62,046 bases of DNA from Octopus bimaculoides (taxonomy: Eukaryota), in NCBI RefSeq assembly GCF_001194135.2, contig NC_068985.1, positions 60,077,352-60,139,397 on the forward strand, in the 5' to 3' direction. Each line of letters opens with the position of its first letter. The stretch's first letter is position 1. The notes beneath the pieces are model-generated. The model had not been told where the DNA came from. It was given only the letters and a program-made list of their open reading frames with translations, and made no database searches. Positions 49,085 to 60,650 of the stretch are shown piece after piece. Made by a program: the position numbers and the translations under genes.

Positions 49085-49505
49085 TCACAAGATGTTTACA
49101 TAGATAGGCGTGCTGTTTTCCTTATCAACATCCTTTAGTGGCTGTGGTTCCCAATAAAGGCCAGAAGTAAGTTTGTCATTACTGTTGATGTTTTTCATCA
49201 CAGTCTGTGGTTCACAATAGAGGTCAGACAGTTTGTCACTGCTGTTAATGGTTTTCATTGTAGTTTGTGGTTCAGCATAGAGGCCAGACATTAGTTTGTC
49301 ATTGCTGTCAACGGTTTTCAGTGCAGCTTGTGGATCATAATAAATGCTTGTAGTGATTTTCTCATAAATGTGTGACTCTTCATTTTCTTGTGAAAGCTGA
49401 CAGTTGACTATAGTATTAGGGCTCACATAAATACTGCTCACATCTGGCTGACTGTATGGGTGCATTTGTCTCCGCTGTACAGTTCCATGTTTTGATATCT
49501 GGTAT
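49085..49505 (-). CDS. Orphan membrane protein, terminal exon: Tyr-motif cytoplasmic tail
   Basis: Acceptor atatatttcag at 49506; phase 2 matches the TM exon (CG|A). Open to TGA at 49085-49087 and includes the 126-aa ORF-track entry. Internal 60-63 nt coding repeats. Confidence 0.85.
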
Positions 49506-52097
49506 CTGAAATATATTTACAACAAACACAATTTCAAGATCCTGTTGTTTTTCTGTGTACAATCAAAACATAAATTCATTGTTATAAAACAGCTGAATTA
49601 AACAGAAAGTGTATTTAAAAAAGATTTAATTTCTAAGACAGTGTTTCACTTATGTAGAAATGTATTGGTAGATAAAACTGTATAGAAATCCATCATTATA
49701 TATATTTATTTATATATAATTATTATAGCATCCACTTTTCCATAGTTGCATGGAACAGAATTTGTTGAGGCAAATTTTCTACGGCAGGATGCCCTTTTTT
49801 TCACCAACCCTTACCTGTTTCCAAGCAAGGTTATATTTCTCTGTTGCTGAGACAGGTTTTCATGAAACATTTAAAATGAATGACCTATAGTCAAAGTGCA
49901 TCCAAGAAATTTATCTCTGACATAATGAAATTAAAACATTTCACAGTCACACATCTCGCATTTCTTTTGCGGTTGACTGTATAGTAGACAGCAATGATGT
50001 AGTTTATCTTTTATACTTTACTTGTTTCAGTCATTAGACTGCGACCATACTGGGGTACCACTTGAAGGATATTTAGTCAAATGAACTGACCCCAGTACTT
50101 ATTTTCTTTTTAAGCCCGATACTTATTCCACTGGTCTCTTTTGCCAAACTGCTAAGTTACAGGGATGTAAACACACCAGCACCAGTTGTCAAGTAGTGGT
50201 GGGGAACAAACAGACACACATTTACAACAGGTTTTTTTTCAGTTTCTGTCTACCAAATCCACTCACACAGCTTTGGTTGGCCTGCATGCCCAAGGTGCCA
50301 AGCAGTGGGACTGAAACTGAAACCATGTGGTTGGGAAGCATGCTCATCACAAACATACATGACCAAGTATTCCACAGATATGTGCACCCTTAATATAGTT
50401 CTCAGGCAGATTCTGTGACAGGACTGTACCTTTTTGATTATTTGTACAATGCACTCAATAGGCTTCTATAAAGTTTCCATCTACCCCATCTTGTTCATAA
50501 TGTAATGGGCTAAAGCAAGGTTACAGAAGTAACAATTGCATAAGATGTCATGCAGTGTGACAACCTAAGACCACATGGTTGTGAAGCAAACTTCATAGCC
50601 ATTTGGCTATACGGCATCTAATAAGTATGTTTATAAATATAAATGAATATATAGACACAGAAATGCTTTTGTGTGTGAGTAGACACAGCTGTGTTATGGA
50701 CTTCTCAACTATGTGGTTTCTGGTTCAACCCTTTTGCATGGCACTTTAGGCAAGTGTCTTCCATGACGCCCAGATTTACTTATAACAAAAGACGAAAGAA
50801 GCCTCACTGTGTGTGTGTTTGTGTCTCCATGTCTTGACATTACATGATGGTTATAAATAAGTGCCACTGTCATTCATTCCAAGAGGAATAGTCAATTACA
50901 TCGATCTCAGTGCTTGAGCATTACTTATTTTATCGACTCCAAAAGGATGACAGGAAAAGTCAACCTTGGCGGAATTTGAACTAAGATCATAAAGATGGAC
51001 AAAATACTGTTAAGCCTTTTATCCAGCATGCTAACAATTCTGTGAGCTTGCCACCTTGATAAACCACATCATTGAAAGACAGAGATTCATCACCATGTGT
51101 TTGCATGTACAAGTTGATATTTATATGGCTTCACTTGACAGCATCCATGAGAAACTGTTTTATAATGTTTACATTCCTTGCTGATCCTGTGACCAGTTGC
51201 TCTGTACTTTTCTATGGCAGTGGAATAAAAAAAAAAAATCCGTTGAAGAAGCAGGTAAAGACTGATAGCAGGAAGGACACCCTGCTTAAATAGACTCCCA
51301 GTATAGATAAACGGATTATCACTAGAATAGCTTTGATATTAAGATATTAAGGCAACATGCTGACAGAATAGTTAGTGTTGGGGAAAATGTTTAACAGTAT
51401 TTTGTCCATCTTCACTTGCTGAGTTCAAATTCCACCGAGATCAACTTTCCCTTTCATCCTTTCAAGGTCAATAAAAGAAGCACTAGTTGAACACTGAAAT
51501 TACTGGCCTTGTGCCAAAATTTGAAACTAATATTAATCAAGAGATTTCTTGAAAGTTTCTCTAAGAGCAGCACAAGATTTCATAACTCTAAAACTCTCTT
51601 TGACTTGAATCATCCTGTGATAAGCAGGTGGAGTTCAATATTTCTGTCATCTTTCAACAAGGACATACCCACAGTCAGTTTGCTAGAAATAACAGCCAAA
51701 ATTCCTTCAAATCATTCACCACTCACCCCAACTTTTATAAAAGACTTTTGATAATGTAGTACTGAGTTTGCAGCAGATAGAAAACAGTCGGGTAGGTCAT
51801 ATAGTCATATGATCATATGGTCTGCTCAGTCAAGGATGAGCTAATGAAGAAATATCTGTGGTAGTAGTCACTAGATTTGCTAGAAATAGCAGTCAAACCT
51901 TTCACAAAACATGTCCTAGCATCTTAGAAATTGGATAATGTATTTCAGATTACACTATGACCCATCCAAGGCATAAATGGCTTGATCATAGATCTGCTGG
52001 CTCAGAGCTGACCTAGGGCTAAACAACAACTTACATAGGTTATTAACCCACTGATCTTATAATCTTGCTACAGAAGAAATATAAGAAAGATTCTTAC

Positions 52098-52173
52098 CGC
52101 CTCCATATTAATCCAATGATAAGAGCCATTATCAAAAAAAGGCCTCCAATTAGACAGCTAATGAGGATAATTT
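52098..52173 (-). CDS. Orphan membrane protein, transmembrane exon (KIILISCLIGGLFLIMALIIGLIWRR)
   Basis: Acceptor tttttctatcattacag and GTAAGA donor. 76 nt, phase 1-2. 23 hydrophobic residues followed by an RR stop-transfer signal. Confidence 0.85.
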
Positions 52174-52396
52174 CTGTAATGATAGAAAAATCAGTTGTAC
52201 AAATATTTGTCTCAGTTAATTCGAGTTTAAAATATACATATGCAAATAGGTAACAATTATATTTGGCTGGTGTTTATAGACTGTTAGCAGCTCATTTACC
52301 TGCATTTATTCATTTTGTGTCTATTTTTTTCCATGCTAGCATGGTTGAAATGAATATTTTATTTTGACATATTGTTTTACAGCTAGATGCCCTTCC

Positions 52397-59673: not shown

Positions 59674-60115
59674 CAGGGGTCAGGGAACTTTTTTAACTAA
59701 TTAACCAAAACTATGTTTATTTATGTTGATGTTACCCCCTTGATTTGAAAGGAAGAAAATCATAGATTCTTTGAATTCGAAAGATTTATTGAATCTGTTT
59801 ATATGGAGAATACAATTATAAATATAAAATAAAACAAATGTGATAAAATAAATTAATATCAACATTATGAAACAAAGGATTTTTCCAGAAACTTTTTCAC
59901 TTCAGGTTTTAGAGAAATGATGTTTGTTACAATTATGTCAAAATTGAGGCATTTTAATGCCAGAGCAATTTGGATACAGTCTTCAGGGTCAGATCGATTA
60001 CTCTGCTTTGTTTTTATGTTCATTTGAGTGGAAAGTCCTTGTTCGCAAAGGTATGTTGTTGCAAAAGGCATAAATTTTTGACTGCCGCCTCATGCCAGAA
60101 GAAAACTTTCAGTCA
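59674..60115 (-). mobile_element. hAT transposon 3' end fragment
   Basis: PFATTYLCEQGLS dimerisation-domain motif (59865-60071) and a CAGGGGTCAGGGAAC TIR-like end. Confidence 0.8.
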
Positions 60116-60557
60116 TAATTTTACTTATGTCTAATGAGTCCTCATTGCCCACAAGAATTTCATTTTTACCTCACTTGAGGTAATTTACACCTGTTCACCA
60201 ACCCCTGCTCTATATTAACATGTTCAAGACTTTGACACTTTAGTATTTAAACCAGTCATACTTGACCAAAATGATTTCCCTGTTTTATCTTCAAATTGGC
60301 CAGATCTGGCCTCTTGAACCTTCTCTACAATGTCATTCTAAAAATAAACAATCACATCATTGAAATCTCAAAGTTACAAGGTAAATGCATGACTAATTCA
60401 TAACAATGTGAATAAATAAGCATTGCATTTGGCAGAGGAATCTGAATGCTAAAGAGTTAAAACAAATTATGAATTCATTTCATTCAGTCTAGAATGGTTC
60501 AGGTAATGACAAATGAGAAAATTCTTTATCCAGTGTTGATAACAAAGTGTAACTTAC

Positions 60558-60650
60558 CATTTCCTTTTGATACAAAGTGATTGCAGTTTGCTGTTGTGTT
60601 CTTGTCACAAGGTTTCCATACTTTGTTACTTGGTTCCCTCTCATTGTTCT
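60558..60650 (-). CDS. Orphan single-pass membrane protein, extracellular stalk exon A (NNEREPSNKVWKPCDKNTTANCNHFVSKGN)
   Basis: Minus-strand acceptor tttttgatttcag and GTAAGT donor. 93 nt, phase 1-1, open frame, Cys pair, NTT sequon. Confidence 0.75.

What the first reader, a model, noticed from the sequence alone, without database searches (positions are those of the whole stretch)
49085..60650. Hidden convergent gene: orphan single-pass receptor/adaptor with a phosphotyrosine docking tail
Four minus-strand exons with canonical splice sites join in one uninterrupted frame (phases 1-1, 1-1, 1-2, 2-stop): glycosylated Cys stalk, 23-aa TM helix, RR, then a ~140-aa tail. Three of the four exons are invisible in the ORF track. 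The tail has no catalytic domain but carries YSQP, YVSP, YYDP, YAEP, YCEP, YWEP, YEKI and a terminal YVNI. Established: pYxxP recruits Crk/Nck/Abl/RasGAP SH2 domains (Dok, p130Cas), and pYxN recruits Grb2. Inference: a kinase-less signalling or immune-type receptor, possibly lineage-restricted. The ectodomain lies beyond the window.
Basis: partly seen in the sequence, partly recalled or inferred. Interest (0 to 1): 0.78.

Follow-up and report, generated by a model that had tools for sequence, protein, structure and literature searches.

The report
Octopus-only membrane receptor with tyrosine tail
The four exons are real and form the 3' two-thirds of an already annotated but uncharacterised octopus gene for a single-pass membrane protein found only in octopods, whose disordered tail carries conserved tyrosine motifs of the kind that recruit signalling adaptors, a function that nobody has tested.

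Summary
The four minus-strand exons have AG/GT borders and join in one frame. They give 233 residues identical to residues 20-252 of RefSeq XP_052823688.1, "uncharacterized protein LOC106872498", of Octopus bimaculoides. The gene is therefore hidden only from a prokaryote-style ORF list, not from annotation. It spans about 53.6 kb and converges on RBBP5.

The signal-peptide exon and a roughly 100-residue all-beta ectodomain exon lie outside the window. In this assembly a 3,959-N gap cuts the ectodomain exon, which probably explains why the O. bimaculoides models lack an ectodomain.

Whole-database searches find relatives only in octopods (Octopus and Argonauta), and no Pfam family matches. A CUB-like ectodomain is hinted at but not supported.

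The tail is predicted to be disordered. It holds 6 YxxP motifs against 0.63 expected. SIYVSP, ENE..HIYE(K/R)I, SIYxDP, a tandem 20-21-residue YxEP module (3-5 copies) and the C-terminal TPIYVNIL are kept in Argonauta at about 43% overall identity.

The best reading is a kinase-less, tyrosine-phosphorylated scaffold receptor that works like DCBLD1/2 but is not a member of that family. Phosphorylation and adaptor binding are inferred only, and an "immune-type" role has no support (no ITAM or ITIM). Interest is modest.

The parts
60558..60650 (-). Coding exon, stalk part 1 (ENNEREPSNKVWKPCDKNTTANCNHFVSKGN), phase 1-1, 93 nt. It is the first exon of the gene inside the window.
   Evidence: Acceptor tttcag|AG and donor G|gtaagt. 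Identical to P0001 residues 20-49. 94% identical to the O. sinensis exon.
55175..55288 (-). Cassette exon, stalk part 2 (ADGNNPGLQGLNKCPDNSTKPSQSNCLRNAPKQTAKNS), phase 1-1, 114 nt.
   Evidence: Splice sites. Present in XP_052823688.1 (P0001). Skipped in XP_052823689.1 (P0005), in O. sinensis isoform X3 (P0003) and in the O. vulgaris model (P0010).
52098..52173 (-). Transmembrane exon, phase 1-2, 76 nt. Codons 52171-52103 encode the 23-residue helix IILISCLIGGLFLIMALIIGLIW, followed by RR.
   Evidence: Splice sites. Highest Kyte-Doolittle window, 3.05 at residue 89 of P0001. Helix also present in the AF2 model of the Argonauta orthologue.
49085..49505 (-). Terminal exon: the 139-residue cytoplasmic tail plus TGA (49087-49085).

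Motif codons:
- YSQP 49456-49445
- YVSP 49429-49418
- YEKI 49366-49355
- YYDP 49342-49331
- YAEP 49279-49268
- YCEP 49219-49208
- YWEP 49156-49145
- YVNI 49102-49091
   Evidence: Conservation of the motifs across four octopod sequences. pLDDT below 30 over the whole tail, which suggests disorder.
49142..49342 (-). Tandem repeat inside the tail exon. Period 60-63 bp, about 3 copies, 78-79% matches. Each copy encodes one M-K-x-I-N-S-x-D-K-L-x-(S)-G-L-Y-x-E-P-Q-T module.
   Evidence: TRF. The O. sinensis genome has one more 60-bp copy. Argonauta has five Y-x-[EQK]-P modules.
48844..48849 (-). Candidate polyadenylation signal ATTAAA, 235 nt after the stop codon.
   Evidence: Pattern scan. No transcript data were available, so this is only a candidate.

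Best explanation
Window 49085-60650 (minus strand) holds the last four coding exons of O. bimaculoides LOC106872498, a gene of about 53.6 kb.

The protein is a type I single-pass membrane protein. In order it has:
- a signal peptide;
- a roughly 100-residue all-beta ectodomain of unassigned family;
- a Cys- and sequon-bearing stalk, of which one 38-residue part is an alternatively skipped cassette;
- a 23-residue TM helix;
- a basic juxtamembrane stretch;
- a roughly 140-residue disordered tail.

The gene structure, protein topology and octopod-only distribution are shown. The following mechanism is inferred. The protein is a non-catalytic, tyrosine-phosphorylated scaffold receptor. Ligand binding or clustering would expose the tail to Src- or Abl-type kinases. 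The acidic ENEESHIYEKI site resembles a Src-family substrate and SH2 site (pYEEI-like), so it could hold the kinase for processive phosphorylation. The array of [I/L]-Y-x-x-P sites (SIYVSP, SIYYDP and 3-5 tandem LYxEPQ modules) would then dock Crk/Nck/RasGAP/Abl-type SH2 domains. The C-terminal pYVNI would dock Grb2/Drk. This would couple the receptor to Ras/Rap/Rac and actin pathways. Tandem duplication of the 60-63-bp module changes the number of docking sites between species.
For: Gene and topology:
- Exact match to the RefSeq model.
- The chromosome locus gives the upstream exons.
- The same exon order is found in Argonauta and in O. sinensis.

Lineage restriction and orphan status:
- phmmer against 1.84e9 representatives returns only O. 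sinensis and Argonauta.
- A profile search against 5.8e9 sequences returns five octopod clusters.
- No Pfam hit reaches its threshold.

Tail:
- YxxP occurs 6-7 times in each of four sequences against 0.6-0.9 expected; 0 of 20,000 shuffles reach that number.
- Invariant columns between Octopus and Argonauta (about 43% identity) cluster on QPDxSSIYVSP, ENExxHIYExITxSIYxxPQ, the Y..P of the repeats and TPIYVNIL.
- pN/pS is 0.44 in the tail and 0.75 in the extracellular part, and 0.54 overall for the window exons.
- The tail is predicted to be disordered.

Motif knowledge:
- CRK/CRKL SH2 domains bind pYxxP, and Src and Abl family kinases target YxxP. DCBLD1/2 use 7-8 intracellular YxxP motifs in this way (PMC6029619).
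- pYxxP recognition by Crk predates metazoans, and transmembrane proteins with YxxP repeats recur (PMC5043372).
- The GRB2 SH2 domain binds pYxN (PMC9279350).
Against: - No transcript, phosphoproteome or binding data could be examined. Everything beyond topology is motif inference.
- Three of the six YxxP motifs come from one tandem duplication.
- In Argonauta the repeat tyrosines have P or H at position -1 and E, Q or K at +2, and YSQP is absent. The exact specificity is therefore not fixed.
- Selection on the tail is only moderate (pN/pS 0.44, 15 substitutions). The contrast with the extracellular part is not significant (Fisher p = 0.47).
- YEKI and YVNI also fit Yxx-phi sorting signals.
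- The O. bimaculoides models lack the ectodomain. Because of the assembly gap, it cannot be shown that this species keeps it.
Confidence: 0.6

Rival explanations
1. The protein is a membrane glycoprotein without phosphotyrosine signalling, for example an adhesion, mucin-like or cargo protein. Its tail tyrosines would act as Yxx-phi sorting or endocytosis signals (YEKI, YVNI), or as unphosphorylated short linear motifs for some other partner.
For: - YEKI and YVNI fit Y-x-x-hydrophobic.
- The tail is disordered, as sorting tails often are.
- No phosphorylation evidence exists.
Against: - Most conserved tyrosines are followed by P at +3. That does not fit Yxx-phi but does fit the kinase and SH2 consensus.
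- The acidic run before HIYE and the -1 Ile/Leu are typical of tyrosine-kinase substrates (own knowledge).
- A terminal pYVN[IV] is a classic Grb2-type site (own knowledge for Shc and LAT).
Confidence: 0.2
2. In O. bimaculoides the locus is decaying. The ectodomain exon would be truly lost or truncated, and the remaining short protein (signal peptide, stalk, TM, tail) would be a relic or a ligand-independent adaptor.
For: - Both RefSeq isoforms lack the ectodomain.
- An older model (P0006) also lacked its 5' half.
- A lectin-like exon present in Argonauta survives in O. bimaculoides only as a remnant with two stops.
- All 9 substitutions in the retained 46 ectodomain codons fall in 8 codons, with 8 amino-acid changes (pN/pS 1.83).
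Against: - The missing 170 nt abut a run of 3,959 N, which is an assembly gap and not a sequenced deletion.
- The retained 138 nt are open, 83% identical in protein to O. sinensis, and keep the GTAAGT donor.
- The four window exons have no stop or frameshift and keep all splice sites.
- The exon is phase 1-1, so an annotator skipping it keeps the frame.
Confidence: 0.1
3. The exon chain is a chance open frame or a mis-prediction, not a gene.
For: Three exons are too short to be judged as ORFs on their own.
Against: - The same exon chain is open in three further octopod genomes, including Argonauta at about 43% identity.
- Splice sites are canonical.
- Exons are slightly better conserved than their flanks (95.3% against 92.2%).
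Confidence: 0.02

Closest known systems
DCBLD1 / DCBLD2 (ESDN), vertebrate neuropilin-like scaffold receptors
   Same: Both are type I single-pass proteins without a kinase domain. Both have an intracellular tail with 7-8 YxxP motifs that are kept while the rest of the tail drifts. In DCBLD1/2 these motifs are phosphorylated by Src-family kinases and Abl and are needed for CRK/CRKL SH2 binding (PMC6029619). This is the mechanism proposed here.
   Different: - No detectable sequence homology.
- No LCCL or discoidin domain, and CUB is not supported.
- The octopod tail gets part of its YxxP array from a recent tandem 20-21-residue repeat and ends in a Grb2-type YVNI.
- The family is octopod-restricted.
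p130Cas/BCAR1 substrate domain, and pre-metazoan transmembrane proteins with YxxP repeats
   Same: Both have an array of YxxP sites next to a site that could hold a Src-family kinase. Crk recognition of pYxxP is ancient, and membrane proteins with cytosolic YxxP repeats have arisen elsewhere (PMC5043372).
   Different: [quoted passage not shown] Neither domain is present here, and this protein is membrane-anchored.
CDCP1 (CUB-domain-containing protein 1)
   Same: A single-pass glycoprotein with beta-sandwich ectodomains and a short kinase-less tail. Src-family kinases phosphorylate its tyrosines to assemble a signalling complex.
   Different: No sequence similarity was found. CDCP1 has few tail tyrosines and no repeat array.
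Transmembrane adaptor proteins of the LAT/NTAL/PAG type (own knowledge)
   Same: They are membrane-anchored and have no catalytic activity. Their disordered tails carry several docking tyrosines, including Grb2-type YxN sites. Ectodomain-less isoform X1 looks superficially like them.
   Different: Those adaptors have ectodomains of a few residues and a juxtamembrane CxxC palmitoylation motif. Here even the shortest model has a 68-residue extracellular stalk, there is no juxtamembrane Cys, and there is only one YxN.

Membership tests
DCBLD1/2 (ESDN) family | Ectodomain of CUB + LCCL + discoidin (FA58C) domains | tested here: not met
   Pfam scans of the O. bimaculoides, O. sinensis and Argonauta proteins find no LCCL or F5/8 type C match. 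The only CUB match is below threshold: PF23061, E 0.02-0.09, 13-16 bits against a cut-off of 30.
DCBLD1/2 (ESDN) family | Detectable sequence homology to DCBLD proteins | tested here: not met
   phmmer against 1.84e9 representatives and a profile search against 5.8e9 proteins return only octopod proteins.
DCBLD1/2 (ESDN) family | Several intracellular YxxP motifs conserved between orthologues | tested here: met
   6-7 YxxP per tail in four octopod sequences, against 0.6-0.9 expected. The motif columns are invariant.
DCBLD1/2 (ESDN) family | Phosphorylation-dependent binding of the CRK/CRKL SH2 domain | not testable with these tools
   Needs biochemistry.
CUB domain superfamily (ectodomain, outside the window) | Significant profile match to CUB | tested here: not met
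   - The Pfam match is sub-threshold.
- hhalign of the octopod ectodomain alignment against 8 PDB-derived CUB domains gives probability 0.6%, with 25 columns aligned at the G-x-F-x-S-x-x-Y-P...C motif only.
- A PDB profile search finds nothing relevant.
CUB domain superfamily (ectodomain, outside the window) | CUB-type beta-sandwich fold | tested here: inconclusive
   The AF2 model of the domain has 8 strands but a mean pLDDT of only 58.5. The top Foldseek PDB hit is C1r CUB2 (E 3.8e-3, TM 0.41), and other CUB domains are mixed with unrelated beta-sandwiches. No hit reaches E <= 1e-3.
ITAM/ITIM/ITSM immunoreceptors | Tail motif of one of these types: YxxL/I-x6-12-YxxL/I, [SIVL]xYxx[IVL] or TxYxx[VI] | tested here: not met
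   None of the contexts of the 10 tail tyrosines fits. HIYEKI has H at -2, PIYVNI has P at -2, and there is no paired YxxL/I.
LAT-type transmembrane adaptors | Ectodomain of a few residues, a juxtamembrane CxxC palmitoylation motif, and several YxN sites | tested here: not met
   The extracellular part is 68 residues in the shortest model and about 170 in O. sinensis. The juxtamembrane sequence is WRRYQISKHG, without Cys. There is a single YxN.
Non-catalytic tyrosine-phosphorylated receptors (a functional class, not a homology family) | Single-pass receptor, no catalytic domain, and conserved cytoplasmic tyrosines in kinase/SH2 consensus contexts | tested here: met
   Topology, absence of domains and motif conservation. 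Actual phosphorylation was not tested.

The most novel reading that the evidence does not exclude
This would be an octopod-born receptor family that independently reinvented the DCBLD/Cas-type YxxP scaffold. Its docking valency would evolve by tandem duplication of a 60-63-bp YxEP module: 3 copies in O. bimaculoides, 4 in the O. sinensis genome and 5 in Argonauta. Its ectodomain would be remodelled by exon death, since the lectin-like exon is intact in Argonauta and decayed in Octopus. That would make it a natural example of de novo assembly of a phosphotyrosine signalling receptor in a lophotrochozoan lineage.
Probability: 0.35. Interest if true: 0.45.

Novelty: new member of a known kind. 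Interest (0 to 1): 0.3.

Why it matters
If the tail is a phosphotyrosine docking array, this gene would be a lineage-specific input into the conserved Src/Abl-Crk/Nck/Grb2 machinery of octopods. It would also show how such receptors arise: an orphan ectodomain, phase 1-1 exon modules, and docking sites multiplied by tandem duplication.

In practice it also flags an annotation problem. The O. bimaculoides RefSeq models of this gene probably lack their ectodomain because of an assembly gap.

None of this changes current understanding of signalling. It is a candidate for cephalopod biologists, not a surprise for the field.

Tried and rejected
- **CUB assignment of the ectodomain.** The G-x-F-x-S-Q-x-Y-P...C pattern, a sub-threshold Pfam CUB hit and a top Foldseek hit to C1r CUB2 suggested it. 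hhalign against real CUB domains gave 0.6% probability, and the structure model is of low confidence. It is not claimed.
- **PDB sequence and profile search of the ectodomain.** Only a spurious coiled-coil hit.
- **A second 'CUB-like exon copy' in Argonauta (L002:36425-36745).** It is a low-complexity Val/Ser-rich microsatellite and a false positive.
- **Synteny with RBBP5 in Argonauta.** The 10 kb downstream flank showed only interspersed-repeat matches, so this was uninformative.
- **Literature search for the locus names.** No papers.
- **O. sinensis isoform X2 look-up.** It failed because only the longest product is indexed. X1 (P0008) worked.
- **L003 in the Python sandbox.** It never appeared there, so exon comparisons went through DNA alignment.
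- **An aa-level Fisher test.** It used wrongly typed counts and is disregarded.
- **The third large protein search.** It was not spent, because the whole-length profile search already covered the ectodomain and the tail.
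Full report
**Observation**

Reading the minus strand at the four stated intervals shows canonical splice borders. Each acceptor is a pyrimidine tract followed by CAG, and the three donors are GTAAGT, GTAAGC and GTAAGA. Joining 60650-60558, 55288-55175, 52173-52098 and 49505-49085 gives 704 nt with a single open frame of 233 codons plus TGA. In a mechanical ORF list of 60 aa or more, only the last exon appears on the minus strand (49085..49465). 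The other three exons really are invisible to that kind of track.

**Identity**

The 233 residues are 100% identical, over their full length, to residues 20-252 of NCBI XP_052823688.1, 'uncharacterized protein LOC106872498 isoform X1 [Octopus bimaculoides]'. The window is 100% identical to chromosome CM046605.1 of assembly GCA_001194135.2. The gene is therefore annotated, though uncharacterised. UniProt A0A0L8H802 from the first annotation holds only the tail exon. No paper in the library mentions the locus or its O. sinensis orthologue.

The neighbour on the plus strand is RBBP5. The exon at 21786-22160 matches PDB RBBP5 chains at E about 1e-17. The WD40 gene model ends about 2.5 kb from the stop codon of this gene, so 'convergent' is correct.

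**The whole gene**

The gene spans 53.6 kb (L001:10001-63622). The signal-peptide exon (MLDRIITCLVLTLAVTGA) lies about 42 kb upstream of window exon 1 and outside the window.

The O. sinensis orthologue LOC115211843 (isoforms of 375, 355 and 337 aa) and the O. vulgaris model carry about 102 extra residues between the signal peptide and the stalk. In O. sinensis these are encoded by one 309-nt phase 1-1 exon (L003:36441-36749).

In O. bimaculoides only the 3' 138 nt of that exon are present (L001:42866-43003). They are open, 83% identical in protein, and keep a GTAAGT donor. They begin directly after a run of 3,959 N. Because the exon is phase 1-1, skipping it keeps the frame. The ectodomain-less RefSeq isoforms X1 and X2 are therefore most simply explained as a consequence of the assembly gap. 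An older 438-aa model spliced unrelated upstream ORFs onto the truncated exon.

Window exon 2 (55288-55175) is a cassette exon. It is absent from O. bimaculoides X2, O. sinensis X3 and the O. vulgaris model.

**Distribution**

phmmer with the O. sinensis protein against 1.84 billion cluster representatives found two proteins: another O. sinensis isoform and a 469-aa Argonauta hians protein with 43% identity. A profile of four family members searched against 5.8 billion proteins, with E up to 1, returned only five octopod clusters. One of them comes from Logan assemblies of read sets SRR11869390 and SRR11869391, and is a genomic contig holding the tail exon.

No Pfam family reaches its threshold for any member. 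Argonauta keeps the same exon order and has an extra Cys-rich, roughly 72-residue N-terminal exon. In O. bimaculoides that exon survives only as a remnant with two in-frame stops (L001:25467-25673, 31% identity, E 1.6e-4).

Eukaryotic genomes other than those behind the protein databases could not be searched. 'Octopod-restricted' therefore means 'not found in any annotated proteome in these collections'.

**Ectodomain**

Its sequence pattern suggested a degenerate CUB domain. Three weak results pointed the same way.
- A sub-threshold Pfam match to a CUB family (E 0.02-0.09).
- An 8-strand all-beta AF2 model (pLDDT 58.5).
- A top Foldseek PDB hit to C1r CUB2 (E 3.8e-3, TM 0.41), with other CUB domains among many unrelated beta-sandwiches.

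A direct profile-profile comparison with eight CUB domains taken from PDB alignments gave only 0.6% probability. The second CUB disulfide is also absent. I treat the fold as 'beta-sandwich, family unassigned'.

**Tail**

The tail is 141 residues counted from RR. It holds 10 tyrosines, and six of them sit in YxxP against 0.63 expected by shuffling (0 of 20,000 shuffles). The same excess is seen in O. sinensis, the Logan sequence and Argonauta.

The invariant columns between Octopus and Argonauta cluster on these elements:
- R..SKH...Q.R next to the membrane;
- QPDxSSIYVSP;
- ENExxHIYExITxSIYxxPQ;
- the Y..P of the repeats;
- the C-terminal TPIYVNIL.

YSQP is not conserved in Argonauta.

Window 49142-49342 is a 60-63-bp tandem repeat of about 3 copies. 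Each copy encodes one ...NSxDKLxSGLYxEPQT module. The O. sinensis genome has a fourth copy, and Argonauta has five Y-x-[EQK]-P modules.

AF2 gives pLDDT below 30 across the tail, which is consistent with disorder.

Between O. bimaculoides and O. sinensis the window exons are 95.3% identical against 92.2% for their flanks. Overall dN/dS is 0.54. By region, pN/pS is 0.44 in the tail and 0.75 in the extracellular part. The counts are small and the contrast is not significant.

**Mechanism**

These points are shown:
- a type I single-pass topology;
- no catalytic domain;
- a disordered tail whose most conserved elements are tyrosines in [I/L]-Y-x-x-P, acidic-run-IYE[KR]I and terminal YVNI contexts.

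These points are established elsewhere:
- CRK/CRKL SH2 domains bind pYxxP;
- Src and Abl family kinases target YxxP;
- DCBLD1/2 use 7-8 such motifs as a scaffold (PMC6029619);
- this recognition predates animals, and membrane proteins with cytosolic YxxP repeats recur (PMC5043372);
- the GRB2 SH2 domain binds pYxN (PMC9279350).

The inference is that the protein is a non-catalytic, tyrosine-phosphorylated scaffold receptor. Its tail would be phosphorylated by Src/Abl-type kinases, possibly docked at pYEKI. It would then recruit Crk/Nck-type and Grb2-type adaptors. I put about 0.6 on this.

The main rival is a non-signalling glycoprotein whose tyrosines are sorting signals or other linear motifs (about 0.2). 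A decaying locus in O. bimaculoides is possible but less likely than an assembly gap (about 0.1). A chance ORF is excluded by cross-species conservation.

**Comparison with known families**

It works like DCBLD1/2 and like the Cas substrate domain, but it is not a member of either family. There is no homology, no LCCL or discoidin domain, CUB is not supported, and there is no SH3 or FAT-like domain. It is not an ITAM, ITIM or ITSM receptor. It is also not a LAT-type adaptor, because it has a long extracellular part and no CxxC motif. It fits the functional class of non-catalytic tyrosine-phosphorylated receptors (term as used in PMC11399299).

**Verdict**

Conservation makes the functional guess more plausible, but it remains untested. 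'Hidden' and 'immune-type' are not supported. This is a lineage-restricted new member of a known functional kind and is of modest interest. The most useful by-products are the evidence that the O. bimaculoides gene models are truncated by an assembly gap, and the copy-number variation of the docking module.

Noticed in passing
L001:38907-42865 (O. bimaculoides CM046605.1, outside the window, about 7.7 kb beyond window end 62046 on the gene's upstream side): A 3,959-N assembly gap abuts the retained 3' 138 nt of the ectodomain exon. RefSeq isoforms X1 and X2 of LOC106872498 skip this exon and so probably under-report the protein. The window itself ends at another gap (L001:49310-50660).
   Followed up: yes
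L001:25467-25673 (outside the window): Remnant of a Cys-rich N-terminal exon that is intact in Argonauta hians (GAB1599008.1, residues about 21-92). It is 31% identical, keeps the Cys pattern and has two in-frame stops. This looks like exon death in Octopus. The domain has no Pfam match. A SUEL-lectin-like look is only my impression.
   Followed up: partly
window 52397-52707 and 54228-54538; also 52397-52565 / 52704-52872 and 54370-54540: Intron 2 of the gene holds a nested set of 99%-complementary inverted repeats (311-nt arms 1,520 nt apart, and 169-nt arms 138 nt apart) plus a 171-nt direct copy. This could be a foldback element or an assembly artefact.
   Followed up: partly
window 41132-45015 (+): Fragmented non-LTR retrotransposon with an AP-endonuclease ORF (Exo_endo_phos, E 1.5e-6) and a reverse-transcriptase fragment (RVT_1, E 2.3e-5). 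It is interrupted by a short N run and lies inside the RBBP5 gene range. A related zinc-finger-like ORF copy is at 17185-17559 (-) and 42664-43149 (+).
   Followed up: partly
window 21786-22160 (+) and onward to about 46547: Exons of the RBBP5 orthologue (WD40 protein). It matches PDB RBBP5 residues about 211-251 at E about 1e-17. It is the convergent neighbour of the gene studied.
   Followed up: partly
window 26222-26710 (-), overlapped by a 151-aa ORF on the + strand at 26280-26735: A 162-aa Ser/Lys-rich ORF antisense within the RBBP5 gene range. It has no Pfam match. It could be a nested gene exon, a processed pseudogene or chance.
   Followed up: partly
window 47805-48680 and 60805-61370: Long TA/CA-type microsatellites that give artefactual 'YIYIY' ORFs on both strands. 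The first contains an N gap and lies between the 3' ends of the two convergent genes. The second lies in the intron just upstream of window exon 1.
   Followed up: no
window 31082-31683 (-) and 37557-38438 (-): Degenerate transposase-like ORFs. The motif HPPYSPDLAPSDYHL recalls mariner/Tc1 transposases (own knowledge). Pfam gave no significant hit.
   Followed up: partly
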